From Schmidtea nova (Eukaryota), in NCBI GenBank assembly GCA_044892505.1, contig CM097882.1, positions 184,698,001 through 184,762,000 of the forward strand: 64,000 nt of DNA, read 5' to 3'. The notes beneath the pieces were generated by a model. That model did not search any database. It worked only from the letters and a program-made list of their open reading frames with translations, and was not told the origin of the DNA. This document shows, piece by piece, positions 10,600 through 64,000 of this stretch; position 1 is the first letter of the stretch; every line of letters starts with the position of its first letter. A program made the translations under genes and the position numbers.

Positions 10600-13460
10600 T
10601 CTTTAATTATGTTGGTGTGTTGGTTGGTGTTAAACACGAGTTTTAGTAGATGTTCGGATTAGGGTAACCCTGCCAACATAAAAAATAATAACCACGCCCT
10701 AGCACCCATGGTTTGCCTCTAATTGCTCTCCATGTTGGTAATGAGTTGAGCAATGGAGCCTAATAGGGCAGGTAAGAAACCTATTCCCCTATCATACTAC
10801 GGGTTCATTTCAACCGATAGAAGGTCTTAGCAGTTTACTTCCTGTCCCTTTTTATTCGTTAATTATGTTCATTAATTCTCCATACTCACATTCATTCACA
10901 TCACTCAATAAAAATAGTAACCCCACAAATAATTAATACATTTATTTAATCGATAAATACATTAGTGTTGATCACATTATTAATTGTTTCTCGGTTAAAC
11001 CGCTTAGCAGGTCCACTTCAATTCCCATGCACTTAGCGAACGTTCTTCGTTCATGGCGTCTATTGACACCCAATATGTTCCTCTTCTTTGTTTTATTCTG
11101 CGTCGGTAGTGAGCTGCTCGTTGGCCCGACATTGGCGTTTTCGACTCTTTTCAGCAGGAGGTGCCTATTTGGTTTAGATTTCTATCGTTATACCTCATTT
11201 TGGCACCCAGCGCTCGAAAGTACTTGCACATATCTGGTCTTTCAAGTAATTTTCGATGAACTCGCTAGTTATTGCCCTTAAACAGCGATCTAATTCCAAT
11301 TTGGTAGCCGCTAGTTCTTTAGACAGCTCATCTAGAGTCTTAGTTGCTCTGTCTTTACTTTTAAGGTGACTCTAATTGCCGCTGGACAGAACCAAGTCCG
11401 TTTTAACTCATCGAGTTCGAGCGCCTGTCGGCTTAACTTTCCTTCCAGTAACTGTATACCTCGCTGCAGCTGTCGTTTACTATCGGTGTCGACAAAAGGT
11501 TTGAGGCTTTCGATCAATAATTACAGACAACCATAATACTAATAGCTATATCTCAGGAAAATATTCATTCCGTTATCTTTACCCCCTAACCTATTGTCTA
11601 TATCTTGCAACACGCACGGTCCATCAAACGTTCATTCATACACTCTAACATGCATTCACATCCACCCATACGAATAGAATACGGTTAACAAAATAAGCCA
11701 TACAAACAAATTCAAAGTATAATTATAATTTTCAAAACAAAATGATAACACCAAGGAAAGAAATCACTGATTTTAGTTCAACATGAATTGGGGCCACATA
11801 TCCAATCTTGATTGTATTGGCTTTCGTCCTTGCGGATACCATTGGCTTGATAGTAGGCCTGGTTTGGCTTCCAACATAGATCTTCCTTGTATAAAGATAT
11901 TTCTCGGAATTGGATACTTGCTGTCTAAGGTGAAGGCGATTTCCATCCTCCTTGGAATTTCCATGGTAGATTTGGATATTCGATCGCCTCTTCGGTGTGT
12001 ATATTTTGTGGCTGATCCAGAAAGATATAACCCAGTCAAGACAAGGTTTGTATCTCGATTCTTTGGAAGAAAAATAGCCATCGGGGCGTGCCGCTGTTAT
12101 CTTGGAGCTCGAGGAACCATTGGATCTGTCTTGTATGGGGTGTATTCTCGGACAAGGGCCAATTCGGTCATCCCTCCCGTCGAACTTTGTACTTCTCACG
12201 TTCCCGTACTCAACGTGGTACAAGCTGACGGAACACTCGTCATCAGTGTCACAAGTGTCGGTCCACCATTGCTTGAATGTCGGTTACAACGTCAATTGGC
12301 GGCTGGTACGCCGGTTTAGTGGTTTACCTATTTCGACGATGGGCGTCCTGTTTTCGGGGAATTTTTATTCTTTAGTCTTGGGGCGATCTCCGTATCAACT
12401 ATAAATATAATTAGGAAGAAAATAGATATAAAACAGGATTAATAGAGTCCATACGAAAATTACAGTGGATTTTCCACTTTCACAAGCATCCTTTCAACCA
12501 ACATTATCCCCTCATCACGCCATCATCTAATCTCAATCATTCCCAGCTGAATTGGTACTTACATTCCACAATTTCAGACCAGTTACACTCTTAAAATTTA
12601 ATAAAACATAACAGTTAAATTACTTTTGCTGTCTATCAGCTGTTACCCGCTTTTTCATTTAACTCGTATTCCACACTAATCATTAGTTTATTTCATTGAT
12701 TGATACTCTCTATGGTTGAATATCTCTGCCCGCAATCAAACGTTAATCCTCCTCGGCTGTTACTAGTTCAATTTCAATCGACTCAATCCAGTTCAAACAC
12801 TTTAGATCTGTACAGATGTTTGTAAAGATCTGTAAAGATGTCACACTGTTTGATCGGTAGTTTATCATGCTTTTGCTTAGTATTGTCTATGCATGTGGTA
12901 TCATCGAGATTCCCTAAACCCTCGATTTGACATCTGTTATTTCGTGTTTGTTTTCTATTCATAATAAAAATTTTTTTGGAATTGTCTTTGTTCGGTGTTT
13001 GTGTTGAAAATGATTACTATTTGCAGTTCCTATGAGCAACCTCTCCCTCCTATTTAGCACTTGTACATCGCACCAGCCAACACTCCGGAGAATGTTGCGT
13101 CGGGAAGACAGTTCACCCGTCAGGTCGTGAGACTGTTGATACGTGCCCTTATTGATTTTGCTAAACATAACAATATAATCAGATTTAGAAAAATATGGGG
13201 GTTTAACCGGAATAAAACATGATAAAATTAATAAAAGAAAATTGCAATAATACCTTTATTTCGACTCCAATGATTCAGTACACAAATTGATTCTCAAAAT
13301 GACTCAAAGTACAAAATGATTTAAATTACTCTATCAAAATAAATCTTGACAAAACTATCTCTCCAAAAATCTGTTCTCCCACTGAATTGGCTGCCGTATA
13401 TATACTATTTTTTGTCGGTTCTTGGCCAATCAAAATCCGCCTGCTTCTGTCATGATTGAC
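10600..13460 (-). mobile_element. Unclassified multi-ORF repeat unit, copy 1 (decayed)
   Basis: Collinear with 47510-50280: promoter, ORF0, ORF-A (11790-12300), ORF-B (10990-11517), structured 3' region. Confidence 0.75.
13395..13432 (-). promoter_or_regulatory. ATTGG (CCAAT) box plus TATA box of unit copy 1
   Basis: On the minus strand GATTGG-21 nt-TATATATA; same spacing as 47517-47550. Confidence 0.55.
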
Positions 13461-26724: not shown

Positions 26725-26757
<33 letters not shown>

Positions 26758-31973: not shown

Positions 31974-32006
<33 letters not shown>

Positions 32007-35000
32007 ATTATTATTATTATAATTATAATTATTATAATTATTATTTACTTGTTCCCATATTTTTAATTATTACGTTTATTTTTTAAAAATTTATGTTATT
32101 AATCGATATTTTTTAACTTAGTATACAAAATTGTAACAACTCTTGTTTAATAACTATTTTTATTCTAAATAAATTCAATAATTACATATGTTTTATTTAC
32201 TACATTTATTTGTTGTTATTTGATCATTTCCCTAAAAAACATCATATTGAAAAACAATTAGATTTGTATTTATTAGTTAAAAATTTTACTTGTGAAAAAT
32301 ATTTACTTTCGAAAAAATGTTTACTTTGTATTTATTAATTAAAAAATTTACATTGATTTTATTGATAAAAAATTCTACATTGACTTTACTGTTAAAAGAT
32401 TTTACTTTAAAAAATTTCAAAAATAATTAATTATTCTCACATTTTTCAAATATTACCTTAAAAAGTTCCTTTAAAACCAATTCATTTTAAAATTATGACA
32501 TTAAAACTCACGTCTTTCTTAATTACTTTTTTATTCTTAATTTACTTATAATTCTATTTATCATTAAATTTATAATTATTTTTAAAATTCAATCTTTAAT
32601 TTATTTACTTTGCCATTTTTCATAAATCCAGTACAAATTATTTTTAAATTCTAAGTTTAATTTACTTATTATTTTCATGCTTTTATTTAATGTACCATTT
32701 TACTTGATAAATTCAATACAAAATAATGAGTGAATTATTTACTGAGTTTTGAAATTCGTATAGAATTTATTTACTTTTTTATTTAATGTACCATTTTACT
32801 TGATAAATTCAATACAAAATAATGAGTGAATTATTTACTGAGTTTTGAAATTTGTATAGAATTTATTTACTTTTTTATTTAATTATCATAAATTTATTTA
32901 GATTTAATTATTTAGTTTAAAAATTTTTATTTTAAATATTTCCACGTTTTTATGTACTTTACCCTTTTTTACTGAGACTGTCATTTCCCGTATAAAATTT
33001 TGATTTTTTCATGATTTTAATTTTTTGACCTTTATTGTTCGCTTTTCAATTCTCAGTAGATTGGTATAAAAATTATTGAATTCTGAGCATTTTTGATTTT
33101 TTGGAAATTCCCCGAGTTGACCTTTTACGTGTAAAAATTGAGTCGGAAAAGTCAAAATTTTCATGTTTTTACTTTTTGAACCTTTTTTGTTCGCCATTCG
33201 ATTCTCAGTAGATTGGTATAAAATTTATTTGATTCTGAGCATTTTTGATTTTTTGGAAATTCCCCGAGTTGACCTTTTACGTGTAAAAATTGGATCGGAA
33301 AAGATCAATTTTTCATGTTTTTTAATTTTTTGACCATTATTGTTTGTCTTTCAATTCTCAGTAGATTGATATAGAAATTATTGAATTCTGACCACTTTTT
33401 AATTTTCCCCGACCAAAATATTATTTTCAAAAATACCAGACTAAAAATCCTATACAAAAATCAAGATCAAAAATCATATTCAAAATTACCAGAGTCCCTT
33501 TTTGCCCGAGAAAATATCTGGGAGTTGAAAATCATATACAAAATACTTTAATGATAATTTACTTGTTTAAAAAATTTACACGTGTCTTTTATTTAGCATT
33601 AAAATATATATTTCAGTTCAAAATTACCAGAGTCTATTTTTACCCTAGAAAATATCTGGGAGTAGAAAATCCTAATCAAAATACTTTAATGATAATTTAC
33701 TTGTTTAAATAATTTACACGTGTTTTTTATTTACCATTAAAATTTCAGTTCAAAATTATCAGAGTTTATTTTTGCCCTAGAAAATATCTGGGAGTAGAAA
33801 ATCCTATTCAAAATACTTTTACGATAATTTACTTGTTTAAAAAAATTAAACGTCTTTTATTTAGCAATAAAATTACAGTTCAAAATTACAAGAGTCCCTT
33901 TTTGCCTGAGAAAAATATGGGAGTTGAAAATCCTAATCAAAATAATAGGACTAAAAATCCTATACAAAAAATACCAGACCAAAATATTGTATTCAAAAAT
34001 CCAGATCAAAAATCCTATACAAAAATTCCTGTACAAAAAGCCCAGAGGCCCTTTTTGCCCTAGAAAATCTCGGAGTAAAAAATCCTATACAAAAATAACC
34101 AGATCAAAATATTGTATTCAAAAAATTAAAATAAATTAATAATTAATATAAAATTAAAATAAATTAATAAATTAATTAATAAATTAATTAATAAATTAAT
34201 TAATAAATAAATATAAAAATTAATTAAAATTAATAAAATTAAAATTAATAAAATTAATAAAATTTAAATTAATTAATAAAATTTAAATTAAATTAAAATT
34301 AATAAAAATAAATTTTAATTAATTAATAAATTTTAAATTAAATTAAAATTAATAAAAATAAATAAAAATAAAATAAAGACTTCATTTAAACAAAATAATA
34401 AAATTAAATTGACTTCATTTAAACAAAAAATATAAATTTAAAAATTCACTTCATTTAAACAAATTAAAAAAATTTTAAAAATTTTATGGGGGGGGGTTAA
34501 AAATTTTTTTTTGGGGGGTCTGTTCCTGTTCTTGGGCGCTCCCCTACTCTACTATTGTTTATTGTTATATTGTGTTATATTGCATCTCTATTAATACCAT
34601 TTTAACGGCATTTAATTAAATTGATTAATTAAATTTTGTTGTATTTTAAATTTAAAAATATTTTCATTTTAAATATATACTAATTACAAATTAATTTGTT
34701 GTTTGATTCTTGATAAATTTAATTTATGCTTATTTTAATATTTAATTTATTTATTTTAATAAATAATTATATATTTATTCTCCGTAAATTTAATTTTAAT
34801 AATTACTTTATTTATTTCCTAAATATTTATTTTTCGTTTATTAAATGATGTGTGTATCCATTTTAAGCACGCGTTAATTGATCGATTAAAACAATCAAAT
34901 TTAATTTCGATTTAATTTTTCTATTATCTCTGTTTTTTACGATATTTCAATAGGGATTTCTTCTATAATTTTTACTAAATTTTGATCATGCTTTTCTTAT

Positions 35001-35834
35001 TCACTATATAAGTATCTTCTCCTTCAATTGTCGTCCGACCTGCACTCAAATTGTGGGATCTCTCCTGAGATTCCTCTCTTCCATCGTTTCCTCCCTAACT
35101 AGACCGACTTATGAGATTCGGCCTGGAGAGATCATGCACGAATAGCATTTAAAATTTATAATTAGCATTTCATGCATCAATATTTATTGCATCGTTCTTA
35201 TTTAGCTTCGAAAATGATGAAAAAATGTAAGAACCGGAAAATTTATTTTTATAAAGATAAAAACCTCGTGATTCACCGAAAATATATATGTGATCGGATT
35301 ATATGAATTTTTATGAAAATTTTTTTTTGTTTAATGTTGGTTTAGGATTAATTTAGTACGTTTTTTTATAAACATTTAGGATCTTATTGATTGAAATTTA
35401 AGTCAATTTCTTTTTAAGCCACCTTAGATCGATTCTAGTCATTTCAAACTCAATTAAGCGAAAATTTTGCAGCAATTTGACACTTGGTTAACAATGATTA
35501 TAGTGCTTGTTTTTGGATTATGCGTTTATTATCTGTATATAAATGGATTTTGGAGTAAACTGATTATTTTCGATTTTTAGATGATAATAGTCAAATAGAT
35601 GTGCCTAAAAAGCTTTAAGAAAACTTATGTATTAATAATTTTAATAATTTCACTTATTATGCCTATTAATTTAGATACCTAAGAAGTACTTGGGAAAAAG
35701 GAAATAACAAATTTCATAGCGAATAATATCTTTATAAATGTGCCAAAGTTATTTTATTTGATAAATCAAATATAGTTATTATACTTTATGAAACTCTTTA
35801 TGATACTTCTTGAACCCGCCCGCGACATTCGGTT

Positions 35835-35985
35835 ATTTATAGTTTCGATTCATTCGACGCTCACTTTTTGCGAATGTCCACCCATTTGTTACAATACCAA
35901 GGTTATATTGTGTCAGGTAAAAAAATGGTTTTGTTGTTTTGAGCCATAGTAACAATCAAAGCCGTATTGAGTATCAACAAGCAAA
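35835..35985 (+). repeat. Diverged copy of the CCA-terminated structured repeat
   Basis: TCGACGCTCACT..TGCGAAT..CCCATTTGTTACAATACCAA..GAGCCATAGTAAC..GTATTGA..ATCAACAA. Confidence 0.7.
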
Positions 35986-44796: not shown

Positions 44797-45478
44797 TGGT
44801 GGGTTGTTGACCGTCAATATGACCTTGACATTGTAATAGCTCACATCAACAACTAAACATGCAAAACATTAGTTTAACTATATTGTTGCCAGTCATAATA
44901 CAACGTTGGTACTGCAACAAATGGGTGGATATTCACGGTGTCAGGACGAAATTACACGAGACGAAATTACACAAGATGAAATTACACGAGACGAAATTAC
45001 ACAAGATGAAATTACACTGAGACGAAATTACACTGAGACGAAATTACACGGGATGAAATTACACAAGACGAAATTACACTAAAAAATAGTAAGTTCAAAA
45101 AAAAATTAGTAAAAAGTTTAAAAAAAATTAGTAAAAGTTAAGTATTAAATTTAGCATTAAATATATTGAAAATTTTAAATAATAAAATAATAAAATAATT
45201 TTAATAATAAATAATAATTTTAATAATTTNNNNNNNNNNNNNNNNNNNNNNNNNNNNNNNNNNNNNNNNNNNNNNNNNNNNNNNNNNNNNNNNNNNNNNN
45301 NNNNNNNNNNNNNNNNNNNNNNNNNNNNNNNNNNNNNNNNNNNNNNNNNNNNNNNNNNNNNNNNNNNNNNNNNNNNNNNNNNNNNNNNNNNNNNNNNNNN
45401 NNNNNNNNNNNNNNNNNNNNNNNNNNNNNNNNNNNNNNNNNNNNNNNNNNNNNNNTTAATAATAATTAATAATAATTA

Positions 45479-45518
<40 letters not shown>

Positions 45519-46145
45519 TTAATAATAATATTAATAATAATATTAATAATATNNNNNNNNNNNNNNNNNNNNNNNNNNNNNNNNNNNNNNNNNNNNNNNN
45601 NNNNNNNNNNNNNNNNNNNNNNNNNNNNNNNNNNNNNNNNNNNNNNNNNNNNNNNNNNNNNNNNNNNNNNNNNNNNNNNNNNNNNNNNNNNNNNNNNNNN
45701 NNNNNNNNNNNNNNNNNNNNNNNNNNNNNNNNNNNNNNNNNNNNNNNNNNNNNNNNNNNNNNNNNNNNNNNNNNNNNNNNNNNNNNNNNNNNNNNNNNNN
45801 NNNNNNNNNNNNNNNNNNNNNNNNNNNNNNNNNNNATTTTTTAGTGTAATTTCGTCTTGTGTAATTTCATCCCGTGTAATTTCGTCTCAGTGTAATTTCG
45901 TCTCAGTGTAATTTCATCTTGTGTAATTTCGTCTTGTGTAATTTCATCTTGTGTAATTTCGTCTCGTGTAATTTCGTCTTGTGTAATTTCGTCATGTAAT
46001 CGATATTCACAATCAGTGAACATCGAAAATTCGAAATGGTGGGTTGCTGATCGTCAATATGACCTTGACGTTACTATGGCTCCCATCAACAACTCAACAT
46101 ACAAAACATTAGATTAACTATCTTGTTGCCATCACAATGTAACTG
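44797..46145 (-). repeat. Two head-to-tail copies of the CCA-terminated repeat (44797-46036 interrupted; 46037-~46145)
   Basis: Both begin TGGTGGGTTG..CGTCAATATGACCTTGAC on the plus strand. Confidence 0.85.
44937..46001. mobile_element. Foldback/MULE-like non-autonomous element
   Basis: 9-bp TSD GATATTCAC (44928-44936, 46002-46010). Arms are inverted arrays of 15-bp GACGAAATTACACRA; AT-rich gapped centre. Confidence 0.85.
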
Positions 46146-47516
46146 ATTCTTGAAAATTAATTTCAATTATTTTACGCAAAATTGAATTATTATTTTTGCA
46201 TAAAATTTTAAATAAATTCTAAATAATTTATTTTTGATCTAAAATTTCATTTTTTAATCAAAGTTTTTTCCAAATAAAATTAATTTATCATAATTTCTGA
46301 CTAAAACAATTTTCTTTCATGTTATTCGAATTTTTACACTAAAATTTGAAAATTTCCTCCCGAAATGATGTTTATTTTTTCTAGTGTGCTATTCTATTAC
46401 ACAATTGATGTTCTCACGCTATACATGTGTTTTTCACGTTTAAACTCAATACGCTTTTGTTCGTTTCAATTTTTCGACGTGTTTTGATTGACTATTTCTG
46501 TGTGTTCCATTTGAGTCCCTTAAAGTAAATTACTGCCCTAGTTGTTTTTAGATATACTGAAAAATCGTTATCAGAGTTCTGTGATCATGTTGGGCCAAAA
46601 CTGCAAATTGTTTAAATGAAGCGGAAACACAACAAGTAGAGAGCGTGCAAGATTCTAATTTAACCAAAACATCAAGTAAAACCGAAATAGTTAAGTGAAA
46701 ATACACCTAAATATTAAAGTGAACCAAAGTGCATTAACAAGATGATGAAAAATTATTAATTTAGTTTTGCGGAAAATTGTTGAAATTAATTTCGAGAAAA
46801 TTAGAAACTCCTTCTAGAACAATTTGCTTTAATATCTCAATGGAAATATTAGGCAGAAAATTTATATAAATACCGCCATCAAAATGGAGAATTTAAGGAT
46901 ATTTTGCAAAGAATTTACGAGGAATTTTGTTGCTAAATATTTTTTGGGGGTTTTTAGCAGGGAAATTTTAACAAAGAATCTCTTACTACCAACTAGTATA
47001 CCAGCGTAACTCTATCAGAATATTACGAGAAGAAGATAACTTGCAGCCGTTAATCGAATAATTTCGTAAGAAACTTGATTTTGTTTCCTAATTAAAAAGG
47101 CCCGCGAAATCATGCCCTCGCTACCGGGCCTAGGTATTTTAATTTATTTTAACCTTTGTCTATGTGTTGGGCCAAGCCATCCGAAAATAAAACAAAAAAA
47201 TAAATCAAGTAAAATAACAATAAATAATGCAAGTAATCAAGCAAAAATAACTTACCAGTCGGCATATGACCAATACACATCAAAGCCTGAAAGCTAACAA
47301 AAAGAATTAAAGCAAAAATAAATAACAATATAAAAACTTACTCAGACGGAACCAAAATCTGACAGGCGTGGGCCGATACAGACGATAATCTAAAAACATA
47401 ACAAAAGATTAACAAAAATTGAGAAATGAATGAACAATAACTCATCAAAATAATACACAAAAGAAAAATCACTAACCATGAAAAGTAATCAATATATACA
47501 CACATGCTCAATTCTG

Positions 47517-47550
47517 ATTGGCTGGCCAGCAACGTCATTCAGTATAAATA
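47517..47550 (+). promoter_or_regulatory. ATTGG box, ACGTCA (CRE-like) and TATAAATA
   Basis: Read directly; spacing conserved with copy 1. Confidence 0.6.
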
Positions 47551-48505
47551 CAACAGTGAAATCAGTAGAAGGGTCAATTTTTTAGAGTCACTTTTTACCA
47601 GCGTCAAATTTGGTCAGCTCATTGATAGCCACTTGGAACTCTATTGTAATTATCGAACCTGATCGGAAATAAAAGGTATAGTTACAACTTGTTTTGCATT
47701 TGTTAAACCCTCATATTAAAATCTGTAAGTTTGGTCCCGAAGGTCAAACGATCTGACGGGATTCTCGGCCTCTCGGCACAACACATTTTCATGTGAGGTG
47801 CTGATGCGGCGAGACCATAGGTATTCTGACTAATTCGGAAGAGGAAGGGTGCACATAGCGTGTTCAAGTAGTGAGTGAGAGGAAGTTATAATAAACAGCG
47901 TGAAAAGAAGGGGAGGTACGGGAGGAACCAGAACCCCTGAAACCAAATTCGGTTGACACCAGCCTAGGGGTAGAGTTCCTGTTATCACCAACCATGTAGG
48001 ATCACCTAGGAGTAGGATTCCGTAACGACCACTGTAGTGTATAACCCAAATGGCCCTACAAGGCATCCCCAAAATGATGAAATCAATGATAATTTGACCA
48101 ATGTTTGTTGAATACTGCGGTTCGTGGATGCTGCATCGATTAATACAATATATAAGTAGCTACTGGCCGATATGATATGACGATCCTGATCAGGCCTACA
48201 TAAAATGATTTAACCATGACAATAATCTGAGTGGTAGCAATGCATAAACCAATGTTAAAGCATAACGTAATAAGAATGAGTAGGGTGACATTGATAAAAT
48301 TATTGATAAAAGACGATTGTATTACATTACCTGATCAGTAGTATGAAAAAATGAACAAACATTCAAGCAAATGCATTCGGGTAATAATCTTTTATATTTG
48401 ACTGTATGATGTGATCGACAACGTATGATGAGGTTAGAGTGGTGTATGATGAGGTAATGTGAGGAATGTCCGACACTACCTTTAATTTTCCCCGTCATTC
48501 AGAGA

Positions 48506-49069
48506 ATGCACCATGAGAAAATACGGCAACGGCGTCACGCTACCAAGGAGATAAAATTCGTGAATCCGGAAAACATCCCCACCAATATCAAGCGATCGGC
48601 CGAACGATATCTACGAGCATGGATGCGACGTCACGTCGACCCAGCCACCCGAGAAACCACCTTGTCATTCCAACTACGAGTGCGGTGGGAAGGCGACCCT
48701 GAGTGGTCGAGGTTGCCGAACTTGCCGAACAAAACCCCCATCCGATGGTTCATCCAATTCGAAAATCAACAATGCCAACCACGATGGATATTGAGTAATG
48801 ACTCCATGACGGGCTCTGATCTCTACAGGCTCGGTTACATCTTAATGGATCGACCCCGATGTATATACAGTGGCGAGATGCGACCATACTTCCATGCGTC
48901 GGGAAGCGTCAACATGGAACAACCTTTGGGAAGAGGTGACGGGAGAATATGGGAAGTCTTCGTCTACAATGATCATCTCTGTTGGGATCCGTGTCCCGAG
49001 ATCTATCAACCAGACTGGAAAGGACGAACGGACAAGCAATACAATCAAGAATTAATAGAGTTCTCCTGA
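48506..49069 (+). CDS. ORF-A, unknown Trp-rich 187-aa protein
   Basis: Open frame with elevated GC; a stop-interrupted homolog lies at 11790-12300 (minus). Confidence 0.7.
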   Translation: MHHEKIRQRRHATKEIKFVNPENIPTNIKRSAERYLRAWMRRHVDPATRETTLSFQLRVRWEGDPEWSRLPNLPNKTPIRWFIQFENQQCQPRWILSNDSMTGSDLYRLGYILMDRPRCIYSGEMRPYFHASGSVNMEQPLGRGDGRIWEVFVYNDHLCWDPCPEIYQPDWKGRTDKQYNQELIEFS

Positions 49070-49319
49070 AACTCATCGGACAAATGTGAAATCTCGTGTG
49101 TTATGATAAAAATAAATAAATGTTTGTATCAAGAGTTTGTGTTTGAATTAGAAGAATGATGCCATCTATGATGTAAAGTGATGGAATGATGACCGCGTGA
49201 GGAGCGGCAAATCAATACAAGGTTTTCTGAATATCAACGACATAGAGCTCGAGGGTAGAAGGGGGACATAAGACCGTAATTGACCATAATTTATGTTGAT
49301 CCTCGTTTCCTCCTTTTAG

Positions 49320-49880
49320 ATGAATACGGGTGAAGTCCGTGATTATAAGAAGGAAGCCAAGGAGTCCAAGTTACGAGTTAGAGTGCTCGAAAGTAGGCTA
49401 CGGCAGTTGAGTGAAGAACATCAGATCGTGAAAACCACGTGGTTCCATCCGGAACGCGTGAAATCTATCCAACAGGCCAGATACCGAGCCGAGCGAATGG
49501 CTGAAGAACAAACCTGAGAAACGACCGCCGTAAAGCTAGAGTTAAACAATTATACGAGGGCATCGACAAAGGACTTCATAACACAGCAATTGCGGCCTCT
49601 CATCCGAGCCAGCACTTTCGACCGCTGGATAGAGTCCACCAGAGTATCCACAAGTATGCACACGGATATGGAATCAAGTTCTATGACTAATACCCCGATA
49701 AATACGTCGAAACCTGAGGGCTCCAAACGAACGAAACGACGGAATCGGTTGGGAGCGAAACAGAGACGATAACGAAGGGAGTATGCCGAGCGAATCGGAA
49801 TTGAGGTGGACCTCCTGAGTGGTCTTACTGAGAAGCAGTTGCTCGCCGTAATCAATCCGTCGACGTTATTAAATGGAAAA
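49320..49880 (+). pseudogene. ORF-B, coiled-coil protein with Arg-rich tail (two in-frame stops)
   Basis: Single frame: ...VKTTWFHP...EQT*ETTAVKLEL...ASTFDRW...KQRR*RREYAERIGIEVDLLSGLTEKQL. Confidence 0.7.
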
Positions 49881-50477
49881 TAAATGTATTTTGATGGAGA
49901 TAATTGACTTGAATGAATGAGGAATGTACGTGTTATTTAAATAAATGTGATGATTGAACAAAACTAATTCATTTTATGCTATCGGGCATCCTAAAATCGA
50001 AAATACCCTAGATGAGACAAAAGAGATTGAGTAAGAAGGGACCAGAACAAAACCACTTAAACCTTCTAACGGTAGTGGTGGACCCGTGAATAAACAAGGG
50101 AATAGTGGCCGCAAGGTTACTCACCTGCCTTGTCATTTCACAACGTTGACACAGCACCAACATGATGAGTAGTTAGGCATACATCATGGGTGTCAGCGGG
50201 GAGATGTTTTTATGTTGGCGAAATCACCCTAACGTATAAAATCAAATATGATCTCAGTTGAACATCTAACCAACACACTAGCATATGTATTATAATATGA
50301 TATGTTATGTAGTCTCTTATGAAAATTATAATTTTTCTATTCAAATTCTTATTAAATCTCGTCACATTTTCTCAGTTACTAATATCATTTTATCATTATT
50401 TATCATATATACATTTATATTTTTTAATGTATTTCATTAAAACCACTTCCATACATTCTGACATCTGGTGAATTTTG

Positions 50478-50665
50478 GGTGTGCGCATTGTCTCTATGAT
50501 AATTTTGGTTATCGCGTCTGTGTGCGTGTAGCTTAAAGATTTTGTACCGCGTCTGTGTGCGTGGTTGTAGGTTTGTGCTTTTGCGTCTGTGTGCGCATTT
50601 CATTTTGTGTGTTGCTCTCGCGTCCGTGTGCGCATTGAGAGATTGTTATCGCGTCTGTGTGCGCA
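50478..50665 (+). repeat. ~35-bp-period array with conserved core GCGTCTGTGTGCG
   Basis: Cores at 50514, 50549, 50583, 50620, 50651; partial core at ~50478. Confidence 0.85.
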
Positions 50666-50741: not shown

Positions 50742-51643
50742 TTGGGTTTTGTTTTATTAATCGAGTTTTTCTGGAATTTACGAATATTCTGGGCTAAAAA
50801 AATGGAGATACCTAAATCTTTACTAATGAAAAGTGCACCCGAAGAAGAAGAAGAAAGATATGAAATTGTAATTAAAACAGTCGCTTCATTGAATAAAAAT
50901 GGTATTAAAGTATGTTTTCATGCAACAATATGCTCCATCATTGAAAGATTTGTTTCTTCATATCCTACAAGTGAAGTAGTTGGTGCTATATTTAGATCTA
51001 TCAATGCATATTTGGGTGGCGTAATCATCAGTAAAAATACATCTAGATTATTGGAAAAAGTTCTTTTAGCCTGTAAATCCAAAGACATTTCTAAAAATGA
51101 GATTGTGAGATTTCAGAGTCAAAAATTCTGTGAATATATGTGGATACATTATCCGGATCATTTAGAAAACAATATCTGTTCGCATATTGTGAGAATGTTT
51201 TTCCAGTTTGCATTCGATGTGTATGTAGGATTGGAAGGAAAGGTGTATTCTTCGAAATCAGTTGTCATTTCTACACCGATGCAGGATAACAAATATTTAG
51301 AAAAATTAAACGACCTAATTAAGCGTTTTCTCAGGAGTCCACAAATTGAAAAGTTAATCACAAATGAATTCAGGAGTTCTACATTGCAAGCTATAATGGT
51401 AATCTGTAAAAGTCGTTGCCTAGACAAATTGAATGAAGTAGTTAAACAATCAATGTCAGTTCGTGGCGAAATGGACAAAACGAAATCTAATGATAAAATC
51501 CAAGCATTGTCTGGCAGTAACGATGTCATAGTTCGATTTGACGATTCTCCCGAAATCCTCTCGAAAGTCTATTTGAATGTTGTTTATTTAGTTATGGAAA
51601 CGAATAAAAATTATTATTTGGCCGTTCAATTGATGATTTTACA
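50742..51643 (+). pseudogene. NOP9: NOP9-like (PUF repeat) N-terminal fragment, uninterrupted ORF
   Basis: EEEEERYEIV, SKNTSRLLEKVL, ICSHIVRMF, FRSSTLQAIM resemble NOP9 repeats by recall. The ORF runs into a non-coding repeat after ~51644. Confidence 0.6.
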
Positions 51644-51797
51644 GACATCCGTCCGGCCTTGTGCTGTACGGACGAAAGTAGCCTTGGTGGATTTCTGTTC
51701 GGTTCGTAACTGGCCAGCCAATTTTTCCGCCTCAGGCGAAGCCTTAACATCCATGATCACTTCATCTCATATTGAGGAACAGTGGCTTGGCCAAGGG
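51644..51797 (-). ncRNA. ~170-nt structured repeat, copy 1 (remainder at 50448-50465)
   Basis: CCTTGGCCAAGCCACTGTTCC..GATGAAGTGATCATGGA..AGGCTACTT shared with 56018-56193 and 62455-62639. RNA function is inferred. Confidence 0.5.
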
Positions 51798-51960
51798 CAA
51801 GGTTTTTCATATTAATAATAATAATCAATTTATATTAATGTATTTTTATCTGAATTATATTATACAACATACAGTAAATTAAAATTTTATATTTTGATGA
51901 AAACCAAAGTTAATTCGTCCAATATTATCTTTATTTCCATAAAACTTATTAGTATAAAAC

Positions 51961-52200
51961 TGGTGGGTTGTCGATCGTCAATACGACCTTGACGTTACTA
52001 TGGCTCTCATCAACAACTCAACACATAAAACATTGAAATTACCATCTTGTTACCCGTCACTATGTAACGTTGGTACTGTAACAAGTGGGTGGGTATTCGC
52101 AATCAGTGAGCGTCGTCAATACAAAACTATGATTGACCGAATATCTCCTGGGTCCAAGGGCTACCGATAGAAGGTTTCTCGCCCCTTTTTGTCCCTCCTA
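51961..52200 (-). ncRNA. CCA-terminated structured repeat (~250 nt)
   Basis: Hairpins conserved with G-U and compensatory changes across copies; ends CAACCCACCA on the minus strand. RNA function is inferred. Confidence 0.55.
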
Positions 52201-52423
52201 TGTATTATTTACTTCGGAAAACTTCATGTACTTCATTTACTATTGAACCTCAGTTGCTTTTACTCAATTTATTCTATACATTGCTTTATTGCATTCAATC
52301 ATTCAACCCAATAAAAAAAAGTAAAAAAACAAGAGAACACTTTAATGTTACCAAAAAAAACAACACAAACTACAAAGAAAAAAAACAAATAAATACACGA
52401 TAGGATATTCGTTGTCCATTTAA

Positions 52424-52987
52424 TCACAAAGCAGTAATGTCTATTATGTCTACAGATTCCTTGCGGACTCGTCCCAGCAGTCTCGCTTCCTGTCGTCGTC
52501 TTCGGCGAGCCCTCACCCCTTTATTGGGCTTCTGTCTGGCTGTTTTGGCGGGAACAGGAGGTGTCGATATCTGTTCCTCGACCCTCATTGGGAACAACTC
52601 TTGAGACAGGCGGGGTGGTTTTGGTAGGACGGCGGCAATGATGCCACTGTCCAATCTCAGCCTTTCATTTTGGGTTTCCAAGTCCCTGATTGTGACTCAG
52701 CACGCCCGCAATCTCATTGCGTCGTCCGCAGCCTGCTGCAACAGCATCTGGTTTTGTTTGCGGAGTTTGTCGACGGTCTCTTTGTCCGACCACGTCGACT
52801 CCATCTCCCGGCACCGCGCTCGGAACTTCTCCATCCGAGAAGTCATGATCTGTAATGCATCCATATTCGAGGTTTTCGCCCTCTCCATCTCGGCGAAACA
52901 CTGGTCTACCCGGCGATTATGGCGGGCATTTTCCACAATCAGTTTGTGTATCTCTTCGAATTTCTGCTCTATATTCATTTCGGACAT
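52424..52987 (-). pseudogene. ORF-B paralog (coiled coil plus Arg-rich tail), one in-frame TGA
   Basis: EMESTWSDK aligns with VKTTWFHP / LKRTWFCP; GVRARRRRQEARLLG aligns with GAKQRR*RREYAERIG. Confidence 0.55.
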
Positions 52988-54799
52988 CTAAAAAATTATA
53001 CAATAATAACCCCTTCCAATCGTCACTTGACATTCAATTCCAAATATTCATTTTAAATCAATAAAACATAATCATTTTGATCGATGAACACTTATCGATT
53101 TTTCATAACCAACACAAAATTATTTCCATTCACACATTCATTATTGCTTACAATGTTTACCCTCAAATATACCATCGCCAACTCAGTTCAGTGATCGAAG
53201 AATCTTTGATCTATCACAAAATTTCGGGGTAATAAATTTTTCTTGAGTTGGACCCAACTATTATTAATTTCTGGGTGGTTTTGATTTTTTATATTTTTGT
53301 GTTGATAAATTTAACTAAAATTTCGCTTATCCCTTATACCTAATGTCTATCTTGCTTATTATAAATCTTTAGCATTTTATTAAAATTTATCATTTTGACT
53401 TTTCAAAAATTCACCGAGGCCCTAGCAACGGTATCAGTATAAAATGCTTAAATATTAAGTAAATTAGATTTAATTATTATCTATTAATTCCACATCCTTT
53501 ATATATTTTCAGATTTTAAATTTAATTTTAATTTAAGAAACTCAAATCGGGTCCGGATACCCTGAAAACAACGCTGTTCCCCCGTAAAAGGAAGGAACTA
53601 TATAAACGGGTTTCTAAATTAGACGATTTTTAATGGGTAATTTATATTATTAAATTTTATTTATTATAATGTTGTTTTATCGATTTTCTTGTTTATTTTT
53701 AGAAGAGAATCCCCTTAGAATTCGTTGGGAAAATTATCATTGGAATTGGTAACTTTTATTTTTGACGATTTAGCTCAAGATTTGATTTTTATTTGTAGCT
53801 TACTCCCCTTGATCGATATTCTGGCGGATAGACGGCTCTCAGTGGCTAACTTTACCAAATGTCACATCGTTTACTCGTTCAAAATTCTCATTGAACGAAT
53901 TACACCCCAAAATTTGGATCAATTTAATTTCGCAAATCAATGCCTCATTATCTCAATAGATGGAGATGCTCTACTATTCCAATGGAATTTCTCCAATGTC
54001 TGGAATTTTTACCTGATCGATGGACTATTATGACACCTATTATATTGGTATATTGTAATTTTATAAAGTGTTCTTTTTGATTTTTTCAAATTTTCAATAA
54101 TAAAAGTTTTAAGCATTTTTAACTTTTTAAATGTTAATGTCGATGTAATTATTATAAATTTTAAATGTGGATGACGATGCGTTATTTAAGAAACTATTTA
54201 GTTGACTCGTAAGATTTAGATGTGTTCTGTCGACTTATAAGCACGTCAACGATCGGTTTACATTTCCGCCTGCTATTTTACAAATTTTTCAATCTCTTTT
54301 GTGTAAGCGACTCATGATTATATCCGTTGTTCAGGGTAAATTTGATTGTGCTCGTGGTATTCCCATCAACTACTAGTTGAAGGCGATCTAGATACCCTTT
54401 CATGTTAATGGGTGTCTCGGTTACTACTTTCAGCTAGTATTCGTACGTGCCGTTGGATGTTGTAACTGTTCCCAATTGACTTCGATCTCCGAAACTTCAT
54501 TTTTTGGGTGTAGTAGATGATATGCAAAATGTGACCTAGATGTGAAGTTTACTATGAGTGATAGGAGTGGTTAATTACCCTGATCCGGTGAGTTAATGGG
54601 CAAGAATGAGGTATGATTTTGAAAGTTTGTATGCATCTATGTCCTTGTCGATTTTGTTACGAGTCTGTTTGGTGTGATTGCCTGTGAGGAACGGTTGAGC
54701 TGAACTAAGTAGTTTGATGAAAATGATATACTGAGTGCTTGGGAGTTTCCTGGATGTATGATGCTAACTAGCATAACTGTGCAGATTTTCTGCATGAAT

Positions 54800-60569: not shown

Positions 60570-61453
60570 GTTAACCGCCACTAAGGCCTCGGCGAGAATT
60601 TAATCGTGAAAATTATTAAGATTACATTTATTTTAATGGTTAATAAATTTTAACTAGCAAGATAGACATTAGGTATAGGGGATAAATAGAGTTTAATAAA
60701 ATTTATTAACACAAAAATATAGGAAATTAAAAACATCAGGAAAATAATAGTAGTTTGATCAAAAACAATAAAAATCAATTACCCCGAATATCAGCGTCGA
60801 TAAAAGATTGTTCGATCCCCGAATTGAGATTGTGATACGATGTTTGAGTATGAGCTTGGGAATAAACTAAAAATCCGAATATGCTTGTTTTCTTTTGATA
60901 ATGTAATGTGTAGCAGCTGATGGAAATAATTTATTTTATTACGCTTTAGATTTTGATCAAAGAAATCGAGAATTCAGTGACAGTAAGGTGCGAAAACGTC
61001 CCGGAAAACCCAAAGAACTTTAACACTCCTTGTACGAATGATTTTATTGATTCTATTCTGTTTGTTCTTGTGTTGTGCATCATAAATGGGTCATTACATG
61101 AATTATTAATGTTTTGATGTTAAAGAATGTTTTATTTTGATGTGATAATATACTTATATCGATGAAGATTATTTATTTTGAAATTCCGATTAAAATATTG
61201 TAGATAAATCATTGAGGAAGGGACAAAATGGGCATCAAACTTTCTATCGGTAGCCCTTGGACCCAGGAGATATTTGGTCAATCATAGTTTCGAATTTTCG
61301 ACGCTCACTGATTGCGAATACCCACACATTTGTTGCAATACCAACGTTGCATTGTGACGGGCAACAAGATGGTTAATCTAATGTTTTGTATGTTGAGTTG
61401 TTGATGTGAGCCATAGCAACGTCAAGGTCATATTGACGATCAACAACCCACCA
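60570..61453 (+). repeat. Diverged inverted copy of 51961-53420, ending in the CCA-terminated structure (61213-61453)
   Basis: GCAAGATAGACATTAGGTATA, TTACCCCGAA and CTATCGGTAGCCCTTGGACCCAGGAGATATT shared; ORF-B part largely lost. Confidence 0.8.
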
Positions 61454-62454
61454 ATCAGTTTAACTTAATTCATATAATAGTGATAATGACGTTTATTATA
61501 ATAACGGAAAATGAAGAGATGGATGTGAATGAATGACTTTGGTGTGGGTTTTCTGGATGTGACATGCTGTGAGTGGGATACTAATGAGTGAAATGATATA
61601 ATTTATAGGTATTTACAGATGAATAAATTTGATGTGCGGTATTAGCTATGGATGGTGTTAATGAATGGTATGGGTGTATTAATTTGCAAAAATTGTTTTA
61701 TGAATTATTTATAGTTTTAGGTGGAGTATTTTATTCAATATTATGAATATATAAAATAATTTCATCAATTTTATAAAGTAATAATCGATTTTATTATTTA
61801 TAAATTTTCCTAAATAAATTGAGATAAATTAAATTTGGAATTTTATAAAATTCTTACAACAATAAACTTTTGATTAATAATTTTCTACGTAAATTAGAAT
61901 ACATTTAAATTTAAATTTTTATAAAATTTATATGATAAAACTTTTAGAATTTGAATTTTTATATATTATAATTTGAATCTAAGACTTTTCATATCATATT
62001 ATTTTCAATAATAGGTTTTAGCAAAAAAATAATTTCGATCGTATATGAATTCTCCAAGCAAAGTGTACATAAAATTTCCGAGACACTTCACTCGGAAAAT
62101 ACTCGAAATTATGGTTAAAATTAAACAATTTTTAGGAATAATTTGTATAATCTAATACGATCTAAACACATCTACTACTCTTTGAACTGCTATTTAGAAG
62201 ATTTTCATAAATTCGATTTTTCTCAATGACTTTGTGATTTATTCCCTGATGAGGTGAAAAAGATGTTCATATGAGCGAAGGTTGGTGACGAGATGGATGT
62301 ATGATTCAACGACTTTCAATACAGTTCGACATCAAAATACTATATTGTTACGAAATATTAACTTGCATCATATTGCCGGTAAGGTATGTATCAAAATATA
62401 TAATTCACATAAATACACTAGTATAATTCATTATCGTTAGTATAACAACGTTGT

Positions 62455-62639: not shown

Positions 62640-64000
62640 AAAAATAAGTTATTTAGTTACAATAATCATACGGTCGATAACTTGATAACTTTAGTAAAAT
62701 GAGTTGACGTGACAGAGTTTAAAAAAACGAATTTCATATATCAAAAAAATCGAAATCAAAATAAAAACAATCTAAATTAAAATCACTATAATTATTTTTA
62801 CTATTTCAGATTTAGATAAAGGTTATAAAATGAAATTATCATAATGAAATAATGCACATATAAGTTAAAGATAAAATAAAATACCCGGTATGGTAAATGA
62901 AGCATGATCACCAACCATGCTTTAAAATCATGAAGCTTACATCAAAAACCTTTTCTTTTTTTTGGGACAATTGATGACTTTGGAAAAAAACCTTGTTGTG
63001 TTACGAATTCTGAAAACTGTTGAGAGTTTTCGGTTGGTGTTTGAAAAAGTTTCTTGGTAGTTTGAGATTCTGAGAAGGTAAATAAAATTCTAATTGCGTA
63101 ACAAATTTTTTTTTCGGCCAAGGTTCCGCTAAAATAGAACTTTGCACCGGCCGGTTGTATGAAATTCTGACGATTTCAATTTTTTGGCGTTATTTATAGA
63201 ATGTTTTGTGTGTTGTTTTCATTGATACAGTAAAACAAATTGTTCTAGAAAAAGTTTTCGACTTTTCGAAAATTAATTTTAATAATTTTAAGCAAAATTG
63301 AATTATTATTTTTGCATAAAATTTTAAATAAAACTTTAAATAATTTATTTTTAATCTAACAATTTTCTTTTAATTTTTCTTTTATCTAAAATACAAAGTT
63401 TTTTCTAATTTAGTTTTTTTCTAATTCTTTCATATTTTATAAGTTTTTAAGATGAAAATCGAAATTTTCATTATAAAAATATGTTATTTTTTTAAATTTT
63501 AAATTTTGTGTTATATATGTGTTTTTATCATGTATATTTGATGCGCTTTTGTTCATTTTAATTTTTAAACGTGTTTTATTTAATTATTTCGGTGTTTTGT
63601 GATTACTATGTTTTACTTGGTGTTTTAGCTCTTAGAATTTTAAATTTACTTCTTGCGCGCTCTCTGCGTGCTGTGTTACCACTTCATTCAAATAACTCTC
63701 AGTTTTTGCCAAATACTATGTTGGTACTGTAGATGGATGTACAAGAACCAATGAGCAGGTGAGCTTCGTTACCAAAATTACTTTTCACTGCATTCTCCTT
63801 TCGGGTTCCTGGCTGGCGGTAGAATGTCTCAGGCTAATGATTTCATCTTTCAAGGTCCATTCAATTATCGTTATGTATCTTTTGAACATCATTTGCTACT
63901 AGTTGGGTCCTTCATTCAATCGTCTGCATTATACATCCATTCTTTTTTACATCAACTACAGAAAAACCCGTTTCCATGATGTGTTCCATTAATCGAATAC

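What the first reader, a model, noticed from the sequence alone, without database searches (positions are those of the whole stretch)
47510..50280. Unrecognised multi-ORF mobile unit: promoter, novel ORFs and structured 3' end, in several diverged copies
Seen: 10600-13460 (minus) and 47510-50280 (plus) are collinear despite low DNA similarity. Both have ATTGG-21 nt-TATA, then GAAATAAA(A)GGTAT, then ORF0 (SHDLTGELSSRRN / SNDLTGFSASRHN). ORF-A follows (VRWEGDPEW..IRWF..PRW..LGYILMDRP..LCWDP..QYNQE / VRREG*PNW..IQWF..PRW..LGYIFLDQP..LCWKP..QYNQD), then ORF-B (TWF, KLEL, ASTF[DE]RW, IEVDLLSGLTEKQL) and a conserved non-coding tail. Partial copies lie at 52-53.4 kb and 60.6-61.5 kb. No RT, transposase, TIR or LTR pair is associated. 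Known: Athena/Terminon (Penelope-like) retroelements carry several co-oriented ORFs including coiled-coil ORFs. Inference: a non-autonomous RNA-mobilised element or endogenised RNA replicon with proteins I do not recognise; ORF-A's LRVRWEG region might be chromodomain-like.
Basis: partly seen in the sequence, partly recalled or inferred. Interest (0 to 1): 0.88.

Follow-up and report, generated by a model that had tools for sequence, protein, structure and literature searches.

The report
RT-less, intron-bearing retroposon-like repeat family
The two collinear units are real and belong to a family of at least eight copies in this window that looks like a gene-carrying mobile element which has no copying enzyme of its own and must borrow one; its proteins match nothing known, but this way of life is known from other elements.

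Summary
Units c2 (47516-50285, +) and c1 (13431-10600, -) are collinear. Their DNA barely aligns, but ORF-A, ORF-B and a ~260-nt 3' tail are clearly homologous (tblastx summed E 3e-29). I found at least eight tail-bearing copies in three subfamilies, not four. They include a shorter ORF-B-only unit (p52, 53431-51961), an internally deleted copy of it (p61), and three tail-only copies that share one exact 3' end but are cut at different 5' points. Two of these sit head to tail. p52 is flanked by a 12/13 direct repeat.

All long units share a leader ending in AG|GTAT. Acceptor-like sites sit just before the ORFs, and AATAAA signals follow them. The element ORFs have GC3 of 0.53-0.61, against 0.23-0.36 for host and other TE ORFs.

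ORF-A has no relative among 1.84 billion representative proteins, Pfam or PDB. I found no RT, LTR, TIR, hammerhead ribozyme or telomeric repeat.

Best reading (0.55): a lineage-specific, non-autonomous retroposon copied in trans through its 3' tail, similar in logic to HeT-A or HAL1. A Penelope/Terminon link is neither shown nor excluded. The chromodomain idea is unsupported. Only c2 ORF-A is intact. Interest is moderate.

The parts
47516..50285 (+). Unit c2, the whole long-form element: promoter-like start, leader, spacer, ORF-A, ORF-B, tail
   Evidence: Homology with c1 starts within about 10 nt of GATTGG and ends just after CCAACACAC. Flanks are unrelated.
47516..47550 (+). c2 inverted CCAAT box (GATTGG 47516-47521), 21-nt spacer, TATAAATA (47543-47550)
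   Evidence: Read. c1 has the same spacing. Function is inferred only.
47551..47675 (+). c2 ATG-free leader ending at the conserved donor AG|GTAT (junction 47675|47676)
   Evidence: The same AG|GTAT(A/T)(A/G) occurs in c1, p52 and p61.
   Evidence: 57-58% identity against a ~40% background. It is an ATG-started ORF only in c1.
48506..49069 (+). c2 ORF-A, intact, 187 aa. A pyrimidine-rich tract ending in AG sits at 48490-48504 and AATAAA at about 49111-49120.
   Evidence: No relatives found.
49320..49883 (+). c2 ORF-B, one frame of 187 codons with 2 in-frame stops. The acceptor AG at 49318-49319 abuts the ATG, and AATAAA overlaps the terminal stop.
50020..50285 (+). c2 conserved 3' tail
   Evidence: nhmmer E 1e-82. 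60-68% identity to c1, the best-conserved DNA in the unit. Folding.
10600..13431 (-). Unit c1, a decayed long-form element, collinear with c2
11799..12394 (-). c1 ORF-A remnant (at least 3 in-frame stops; N-terminal part not alignable)
10972..11517 (-). c1 ORF-B remnant (2 frame changes)
10600..10860 (-). c1 3' tail
   Evidence: nhmmer E 8e-78.
51961..53431 (-). Unit p52, the short-form element: 92-nt leader (donor 53340|53339), 352-nt intron-like stretch, ORF-B-like gene, tail ending ...CAACCCACCA
   Evidence: Flanked by a 13-nt direct repeat, 12/13 identical (53444-53432 and 51959-51947).
52424..52987 (-). p52 ORF-B-like gene, 187 codons with 1 in-frame stop. The N-terminal part forms two long helices.
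   Evidence: AF2 pLDDT 86. Collinear marginal BLASTP matches to c2 ORF-B, E 0.05 and 0.09.
60575..61453 (+). Unit p61, a short form with most of the ORF deleted but the leader, donor, acceptor-like site and tail kept
   Evidence: 76% and 87% identity to p52.
35792..35982 (+). p35, a tail-only (5'-truncated) copy with a decayed 3' tip
   Evidence: nhmmer E 9e-27; blastn 79-82%.
46037..46151 (-). t46, a tail-only copy ending at the family's exact 3' end and abutting the next copy head to tail
44797..46036 (-). X44, a second tail-only copy (pieces 46036-46011 and 44936-44797) split by an unrelated 1065-bp foldback insertion (44937-46001)
   Evidence: The 9-nt duplication GATATTCAC is at 44928-44936 and 46002-46010.
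63685..63841 (-). c3, part of the tail of a third subfamily; the body lies beyond the window end
   Evidence: nhmmer E 5e-8 with the joint model and E 2e-4 to 4e-4 with each family model.

Best explanation
This is a lineage-specific family of non-autonomous retroposons that carry genes but no reverse transcriptase.

Proposed anatomy and mechanism:
- Each full unit is transcribed by RNA polymerase II from its 5' end. A CCAAT/TATA-like start is conserved in the long form.
- The unspliced RNA would be the transposition intermediate.
- Splicing from a short ATG-free leader to acceptors placed just before ORF-A or ORF-B, with a polyadenylation signal after each ORF, would give the mRNAs.
- ORF-B (helical N-half, basic C-half) would act like a Gag/ORF1p-type RNA-binding chaperone. 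ORF-A is an orphan accessory protein.
- The conserved ~260-nt tail at the 3' end is the cis element that a reverse transcriptase encoded elsewhere (LINE-like or Penelope-like) recognises to prime copying at a nicked target. This would produce copies with one fixed 3' end, variable 5' truncation, occasional head-to-tail pairs and target duplications.

Shown: homology, anatomy, copy pattern, composition and absence of an RT in the units.
Inferred: transcription start, splicing, protein roles and the trans-acting RT.
For: 1. Real, old, protein-constrained homology. tblastx E is 3e-29 with almost no DNA identity. Identity by codon position is 0.55/0.63/0.37 over 221 codons.
2. At least eight copies in three subfamilies within 64 kb, in both orientations.
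3. Four family-2 tails end at exactly the same base, after which similarity stops.
4. Three copies are tail-only and truncated at different 5' points.
5. t46 and X44 are joined head to tail, with a 3' end directly against a truncated 5' end.
6. p52 starts where p52/p61 similarity starts and is flanked by a 12/13 direct repeat abutting both ends.
7. p61 is an internal-deletion derivative.
8. The donor AG|GTAT is conserved in all four long copies. AG|ATG acceptors sit at ORF-B, and leaders are ATG-free in c1 and c2.
9. GC3 is 0.53-0.61 in element ORFs against 0.23-0.36 in host and other TE ORFs. The units form GC islands.
10. The tail is the best-conserved DNA and has conserved stems.
11. The units contain no RT, LTR or TIR.
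Against: - No RT-bearing partner with the same tail was seen. Only one window is available, and no relatives turned up in public protein, metagenome or viral collections.
- c1 and c2 share a promoter-like block upstream of the expected start site. A simple RNA copy would not carry this unless transcription starts at the unit's first bases.
- c1 and c2 have no detectable target duplication. The p52 repeat is not significant on an unrestricted scan (p 0.13).
- AATAAA signals lie upstream of the tail, so the tail would be absent from normally polyadenylated mRNAs.
- The tail's fold is not strand-specific and is thermodynamically unremarkable in single sequences.
- All splicing is inferred from motifs.
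- Homology of p52 ORF-B to c1/c2 ORF-B is marginal.
Confidence: 0.55

Rival explanations
1. These are fragments or modules of a much larger composite retroelement of the Penelope-like/Athena-Terminon kind, or cargo moved by one. The RT lies outside the window, and ORF-A and ORF-B are accessory 'structural' ORFs of such units.
For: - Terminons are described as carrying many co-oriented ORFs, including coiled-coil ones, and as often 5'-truncated (PMC5408684, PMC5537684).
- PLEs retain introns and can move intron-bearing genes in trans (PMC3846280, PMC8557442).
- Here there are intron-like stretches, a helical ORF, one partial tandem and no RT in the units.
Against: - No hammerhead motif in either tail family at E<=5.
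- No telomeric repeat stretches.
- No pLTR-type repeat at both ends.
- Units lie in both orientations between ordinary host-like ORFs, not in a co-oriented chain.
- The host is unidentified.
Confidence: 0.17
2. This is an ordinary host multigene family (promoter, introns, 3' UTR) that grew by DNA duplication and is now mostly pseudogenes. The tail-only pieces are deletion remnants.
For: - The CCAAT/TATA block is conserved upstream of the expected start in c1 and c2.
- Introns and polyadenylation signals look like a normal gene.
- c1 and c2 have no target duplication.
- Most copies are broken.
Against: - Exact shared 3' ends with graded 5' truncation and a head-to-tail junction.
- The p52 flanking repeat.
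- Flanks are unrelated right up to the unit ends.
- GC3 is about twice that of host ORFs in the same window.
- Copies are scattered in both orientations.
Confidence: 0.13
3. These are integrated copies of a small virus-like DNA or RNA replicon with a spliced leader, two genes and a terminal hairpin-rich region. They would be endogenised several times or spread as DNA.
For: - A compact layout with one leader, alternative acceptors, two polyadenylation signals and a stem-rich end that folds equally well on either strand.
- Foreign-looking codon composition.
- Orphan proteins.
Against: - No replicase, Rep or capsid-like hit in any library, and none in viral contigs.
- Defined linear ends rather than permuted ones.
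- The 5'-truncation series is typical of reverse transcription from the 3' end.
Confidence: 0.1
4. This is a non-autonomous DNA transposon, Helitron-like or otherwise lacking TIRs, that captured genes.
For: - A conserved 3' end with a hairpin a few bases before the terminus.
- Gene-like cargo with introns.
Against: - No TIRs.
- The ends do not fit the 5' TC / 3' CTRR pattern in c1, p52 or p61.
- A 13-nt flanking repeat and 5'-truncated copies are not expected for Helitrons.
Confidence: 0.05

Closest known systems
HeT-A of Drosophila telomeres (a Gag-only non-LTR retrotransposon)
   Same: It encodes a structural protein but no RT, depends on an RT supplied in trans, has a long conserved 3' region, and forms head-to-tail, 5'-truncated copies (PMC5537684).
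   Different: HeT-A ends in oligo(A), is telomere-specific, has a zinc-knuckle Gag, has no leader intron, and drives its neighbour from a 3' promoter. Here there is no A-tail, no telomere context, no sequence similarity, two ORFs in the long form and a spliced leader.
HAL1 ('half-L1') ORF1-only LINE derivatives of mammals (from my own knowledge, not checked with a tool)
   Same: A non-autonomous element that keeps an ORF1-type coiled-coil protein and the parent's 3' end.
   Different: HAL1 is plainly L1-derived. Here no parent is known, ORF-B has no detectable ORF1p similarity, and the extra ORF-A and the introns have no counterpart.
Penelope-like elements, including Athena/Terminons and PLE-mediated movement of intron-bearing genes
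   Same: Introns are kept in copies. There is a TATA-bearing 5' region with an intron in the 5' UTR, partial tandems, 5' truncation, coiled-coil accessory ORFs, and trans-mobilisation by terminal cis sequences (PMC3846280, PMC8557442, PMC5408684).
   Different: The window shows no PLE RT, no pLTR at both ends, no hammerhead ribozyme, no telomeric repeats and no GIY-YIG.
LINE/SINE pairs with 'stringent' 3'-tail recognition (for example the eel UnaL2/UnaSINE1 type; from my own knowledge)
   Same: A conserved stem-loop tail without poly(A) serves as the handle for the partner's RT.
   Different: Those SINEs are short, non-coding and Pol III-driven. These units are 1.5-2.8 kb, protein-coding and have Pol II-type signals. 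There was no Rfam hit to known LINE 3' elements.

Membership tests
Penelope-like elements / Athena / Terminon | PLE-type reverse transcriptase in the unit | tested here: not met
   All ORFs of the units were scanned. There were no Pfam hits above threshold, no RT among window ORFs of at least 130 aa, and phmmer of ORF-A gave 0 hits. An RT outside the window cannot be excluded.
Penelope-like elements / Athena / Terminon | Hammerhead ribozyme motif near the 3' end | tested here: not met
   Rfam gave no hammerhead at gathering score over the whole window, nor at E<=5 over c2 and p52. By eye, no CUGANGA...GAAA core is conserved in the tails.
Penelope-like elements / Athena / Terminon | Short reverse-complement telomeric repeats at the 3' end (EN-deficient clades) | tested here: inconclusive
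   No TGTGGG-type arrays in the window. The tails end in single C/A-rich strings (CAACCCACCA, CCAACACAC). The host's telomere repeat is unknown.
Penelope-like elements / Athena / Terminon | pLTRs or partial tandems framing the unit | tested here: inconclusive
   There is no similarity between upstream and downstream ends of c1 or c2. One head-to-tail pair of truncated tails exists.
Penelope-like elements / Athena / Terminon | Introns retained in genomic copies | tested here: inconclusive
   The donor is conserved in 4 copies and acceptors abut the ORFs. There is no transcript evidence.
Non-autonomous non-LTR retroposon (HeT-A / HAL1 / SINE logic) | Common 3' end with variable 5' truncation | tested here: met
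   Four tails end at the same base. p35, t46 and X44 are truncated at different points.
Non-autonomous non-LTR retroposon (HeT-A / HAL1 / SINE logic) | Target-site duplication of variable length | tested here: inconclusive
   p52 has a 12/13 repeat abutting both ends, but the unrestricted shuffle p is 0.13. Nothing convincing for c1, c2, p61 or p35.
Non-autonomous non-LTR retroposon (HeT-A / HAL1 / SINE logic) | 3' tail shared with an autonomous RT-encoding partner | not testable with these tools
   The source genome is not in any searchable collection.
Non-autonomous non-LTR retroposon (HeT-A / HAL1 / SINE logic) | Poly(A) or simple-repeat 3' terminus | tested here: not met
   The termini are CAACCCACCA or CCAACACAC, followed directly by flank.
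LTR retrotransposon / endogenous retrovirus | Pair of long terminal repeats | tested here: not met
DNA transposon (TIR type or Helitron) | Terminal inverted repeats, or 5' TC / 3' CTRR ends with a subterminal hairpin | tested here: not met
   No TIR pair bounds any unit. The end sequences do not fit in c1, p52 or p61.
   No Pfam hit at E<=1 and none in PDB sequences at E<=10. The AF2 model has pLDDT 41.6, too poor for a fold search.
Host multigene family | Composition and codon usage like neighbouring host genes | tested here: not met
   GC3 is 0.53-0.61 against 0.27-0.32 for four host-like ORFs.

The most novel reading that the evidence does not exclude
The family could be a previously undescribed type of protein-coding, spliced, RT-less retroposon. 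Two orphan proteins (ORF-A, and a two-part ORF-B whose interruption recurs in the same alignment interval in three deeply diverged lineages) together with a structured non-poly(A) tail would hijack a resident reverse transcriptase. The recurrent ORF-B interruption would then be a programmed recoding or two-cistron device rather than decay. The foreign codon composition would mark recent horizontal arrival.
Probability: 0.2. Interest if true: 0.65.

Novelty: new variant of a known kind. Interest (0 to 1): 0.45.

Why it matters
If the reading is right, this adds a clear non-insect, non-mammal example of a retroposon that keeps its own genes, promoter-like start and splicing programme but has given up its polymerase.

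The conserved tail gives a concrete handle for finding which RT family it exploits. ORF-A and ORF-B are families with no detectable relatives in about 1.8 billion representative proteins, so they are candidates for new RNA-binding or RT-recruiting folds.

Practically, units like these would be mis-annotated as orphan host genes and would inflate gene and 'retrocopy' counts in the source genome. That said, orphan, lineage-specific transposable elements are common in poorly sampled invertebrates. The find is useful rather than startling.

Tried and rejected
**Searches that came back empty**
- ORF-A: word-indexed search, exhaustive phmmer, PDB sequences, Pfam, NCBIfam and viral contigs.
- ORF-B pieces: only sub-threshold coiled-coil-type Pfam noise. 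The length window of the word-indexed search cannot reach an intact ~187-aa relative from the pieces, so I did not try that route.
- Tail motif scans of metagenome and viral contigs, and a peptide scan with the conserved ORF-B C-terminus. A first alignment for the peptide scan was too divergent to use.
- Exact-protein look-ups of three window ORFs: not on record.
- Rfam, including hammerhead, SECIS and LINE 3' elements: nothing. No tRNAs.

**Analyses that gave nothing usable**
- AF2 of ORF-A was unusable, so I ran no fold search.
- RNAalifold on the first tail hairpin across subfamilies predicted nothing. The compensatory stems I saw by eye there are offset by one column and remain anecdotal.
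- The bacterial promoter/terminator scan is irrelevant here.

**Host identification failed**
- The NOP9-like ORF has one relative, in forest-soil metagenomes.
- The hAT-like ORF belongs to a patchily distributed KIAA1586-like family (Hydra, reptiles, a click beetle) at 50-74% identity.
- The Terminon paper itself is not held.

**Ideas rejected**
- pLTR structure.
- Helitron ends.
- A tRNA-like or Pol III small-RNA gene in the tail (no A/B-box spacing, no ARAGORN hit).
- A telomerase-RNA-like template. CCCTAA occurs in c1 and c2 only and is not conserved in the other subfamily.
- The long ORF antisense to c1 ORF-A (11783-12319). It is not conserved in c2; antisense tblastx scores are about 25 bits against 58 bits for sense.


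Full report
**1. Setting**

The window is AT-rich (30% GC without the N runs) and looks like gene-poor metazoan DNA.
- It holds a few host-like ORFs: SAPS-like at 7.2-8.0 kb, CAP-Gly-like at 20.3-20.7 kb, an RRM-like exon at 41.2-41.5 kb, and NOP9/PUF-like at 50.7-51.8 kb.
- It also holds transposon debris, satellites and six N gaps.
- I left the N runs alone.
- I could not name the organism. The NOP9-like ORF has a single relative (65% identity), from forest-soil metagenome contigs. A hAT-like ORF belongs to a patchily distributed KIAA1586-like family.

**2.

- tblastx of 47300-50500 against the window gives one collinear chain on the minus strand at 10.6-12.2 kb. ORF-A pairs 48677-49057 with 12188-11799 at 34-37% identity. 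ORF-B pairs 49473-49844 with 11362-10978 at 41-45%. The summed E is 3e-29.
- blastn sees only the ORF-B C-terminus and the tail (66% over 288 nt).
- A MAFFT alignment of the two units, profiled in 60-column windows, shows islands of 55-68% identity over a ~40% background. The islands are the first ~70 nt, a block about 45-130 nt after the donor, both ORFs, and above all the last ~260 nt.
- Within the protein-level matches, identity is 0.55, 0.63 and 0.37 at codon positions 1, 2 and 3 (221 codons). This is the signature of past selection on the proteins. Choosing segments by protein score biases the figure somewhat.

**3. There are more copies, in three subfamilies**

Profile searches with the tails find the following.

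| Copy | Coordinates | Strand | Form |
|---|---|---|---|
| c1 | 10860-10600 | - | long form |
| c2 | 50020-50289 | + | long form |
| c3 | 63841-63685 | - | body beyond the window end |
| p52 | 52229-51961 | - | short form |
| p61 | 61191-61453 | + | short form, internally deleted |
| p35 | 35792-35982 | + | tail only |
| t46 | 46151-46037 | - | tail only |
| X44 | 46036-46011 plus 44936-44797 | - | tail only, split |

- All subfamilies share short blocks in the same order: ACCTTCTAWCGGT, GRACCC, CTCAC, ACCAACRT, then a terminal stem.
- The ACCTTCTAWCGGT motif occurs 7 times with up to 2 mismatches, against 1.2 expected.

**4. Anatomy**

Long form (c2, about 2.8 kb), in order:
1. An inverted CCAAT box and a TATA-like box.
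2. An ATG-free leader ending in AG|GTAT (47675|47676).
3. It is an ATG-started ORF only in c1.
4. About 700 nt of unconserved spacer.
5. A pyrimidine tract ending in AG directly before the ORF-A ATG.
6. ORF-A (48506-49069, 187 aa, intact), followed by AATAAA.
7. About 250 nt of spacer with patchy conservation.
8. An acceptor AG abutting the ORF-B ATG (49319|49320).
9. ORF-B (187 codons), with AATAAA overlapping its stop.
10. A GATG/GAATG-rich stretch, then the tail.

Short form (p52, 1471 nt):
- A 92-nt leader ending in the same AG|GTAT.
- A 352-nt AT-rich (28% GC) intron-like stretch ending in TTTTTAG directly before an ATG.
- An ORF-B-like frame, again 187 codons.
- AATAAA-type signals, then a tail ending CAACCCACCA.

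p61 keeps the leader, donor, acceptor-like site and tail but has lost most of the ORF.

The N-terminal 96 residues of p52 ORF-B model as two long helices (pLDDT 86). The C-half is basic. Similarity of p52 ORF-B to c2 ORF-B is collinear but marginal (E 0.05 and 0.09), so the homology rests mainly on architecture.

**5. State of the genes (counts only)**

| Gene | State |
|---|---|
| c2 ORF-A | intact |
| c2 ORF-B | 2 in-frame stops |
| p52 ORF-B | 1 in-frame stop |
| c1 ORF-A | at least 3 in-frame stops |
| c1 ORF-B | 2 frame changes |
| p61 | ORF largely deleted |

One interruption per lineage falls in the same alignment interval in all three ORF-B versions. My rough estimate of the joint chance is about 0.002 (inference, not a tool result). 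It may therefore be a feature, such as recoding or two cistrons, rather than decay. I do not give places.

**6. Evidence for movement through RNA**

- Four family-2 tails end at the same base, and similarity stops there.
- p35, t46 and X44 are tail-only and start at different internal points.
- On the minus strand, the 3' end of t46 is joined directly to the truncated 5' end of X44.
- X44 was later split by an unrelated 1065-bp foldback insertion with a 9-nt duplication. I compared the pieces apart and did not close the gap.
- p52 begins exactly where p52/p61 similarity begins. It is flanked by a 13-nt direct repeat (12/13 identical) that abuts both ends. An unrestricted shuffle test gives only p 0.13 in this AT-rich DNA, so its weight comes from its position.
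- c1, c2, p61 and p35 show no convincing duplication.
- Flanks of c1 and c2 are unrelated to each other and to the tails, so there is no LTR or pLTR. No TIR pair bounds any unit.
- The units are GC islands. Their ORFs have GC3 of 0.53-0.61, against 0.27-0.32 for host-like ORFs and 0.23-0.36 for the hAT-like and Pao-like ORFs. That argues against an old host gene family and for an element with its own history.

**7. The tail as a structured element**

- RNAalifold finds a terminal 9-bp stem enclosing a 6-bp hairpin in family 2, and 43 pairs (10 with double changes) for c1/c2.
- Against 200 column shuffles, the consensus energies are outliers, with z of -13 and -4.5.
- Single-sequence z-scores are only -0.75, -2.1 and -0.94. 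The reverse complements fold as well.
- Conserved stems are therefore supported. Strand and function are not.
- No Rfam family matches.

**8. What the proteins are**

- ORF-A has no hit in Pfam, NCBIfam, PDB sequences, the 5.8-billion-protein word index, an exhaustive phmmer of 1.84 billion representatives, or viral contigs.
- Its AF2 model is unusable (pLDDT 41.6).
- The chromodomain suggestion has no support.
- ORF-B pieces give only sub-threshold coiled-coil noise.

**9. Most likely mechanism**

- The best reading (confidence 0.55) is a non-autonomous retroposon.
- Full-length unspliced RNA would be the template. Leader-to-acceptor splicing plus internal polyadenylation would give mRNAs for ORF-A and ORF-B.
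- ORF-B would serve as a Gag/ORF1p-like chaperone.
- The tail would be the handle for an RT encoded elsewhere, which primes at a nick and often stops early.
- Points that do not fit well:
  - The CCAAT/TATA block sits at the very start of the conserved unit.
  - AATAAA signals lie upstream of the tail.
  - c1 and c2 lack target duplications.
  - No partner RT was found.

**10. Comparison with known systems**

- In logic, the family is closest to HeT-A (Gag-only, RT in trans, head-to-tail truncated copies; PMC5537684) and to ORF1-only LINE derivatives (my own knowledge).
- Intron retention, a TATA-bearing 5' region with a 5'-UTR intron, partial tandems and trans-mobilisation by terminal cis sequences are hallmarks of Penelope-like elements (PMC3846280, PMC8557442). 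Terminons carry coiled-coil accessory ORFs (PMC5408684).
- The defining PLE features I could test were not met: RT, hammerhead, telomeric repeats and pLTR. I therefore do not file the family there.

**11. Verdict**

The family is best called a new variant of a known kind. Interest is 0.45.

Consensus lines printed by alignment tools were not used.
- Slip: my notebook entry 2 and my working named the rough place of one ORF-B interruption.

Noticed in passing
window 24223-34518: A ~10-kb near-perfect palindrome. Its arms are 97-99% complementary and built of 93/189-nt, 117-nt, 132-nt and 152-nt satellite arrays around a ~2.1-kb centre (28548-30641). One N gap lies in the left arm.
   Followed up: no
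window 44937-46001: A foldback-type insertion inside a tail copy. Its ends are inverted arrays of a 15-nt unit (44942-45087 and 45836-45981, 99% complementary), its middle holds AT-rich DNA and two N gaps, and it is flanked by a 9-nt duplication, GATATTCAC.
   Followed up: partly
window 549-2542 (-): Two adjacent ORFs (386 and 275 aa) of a hAT-type, KIAA1586-like transposase. Relatives at 50-74% identity are scattered over Hydra, snakes, turtles and a click beetle, which suggests a horizontally spreading family. There was no Pfam hit at E<=0.01.
   Followed up: partly
window 4985-7000 and 21731-23550: ORFs that look to me like gag/protease pieces of a BEL/Pao-type LTR retrotransposon. This rests on motifs recognised by eye only. 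Pfam gave nothing at E<=0.01.
   Followed up: no
window 50742-51815 (+): A 357-aa NOP9/PUF-like host ORF sits tightly between c2 (which ends about 450 nt upstream) and the 3' end of p52 (about 145 nt downstream). Its only detectable relative (65% identity) comes from forest-soil metagenome contigs.
   Followed up: partly
ORF-B of c2, c1 and p52: Each of the three deeply diverged versions has one interruption in the same alignment interval (a stop in two, a frame change in one). This may reflect recoding or two cistrons rather than decay. Places are deliberately not listed.
   Followed up: partly
window 11783-12319 (+): A 178-aa ORF runs antisense to the broken c1 ORF-A. It is not conserved in c2, so it is probably a by-product of composition.
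   Followed up: partly
window 49885-49960, 10950-10880 (-), 49140-49200, 61500-61600: GATG/GAATG-rich stretches follow each AATAAA signal in the units, and one also lies just past the 3' end of p61. They may be GU-rich downstream polyadenylation elements.
   Followed up: no
window 14226-14401: An 18-nt tandem array (9.8 copies, 94% matches) inside a GC-rich island (14101-14800), just beyond the 5' side of c1.
   Followed up: no
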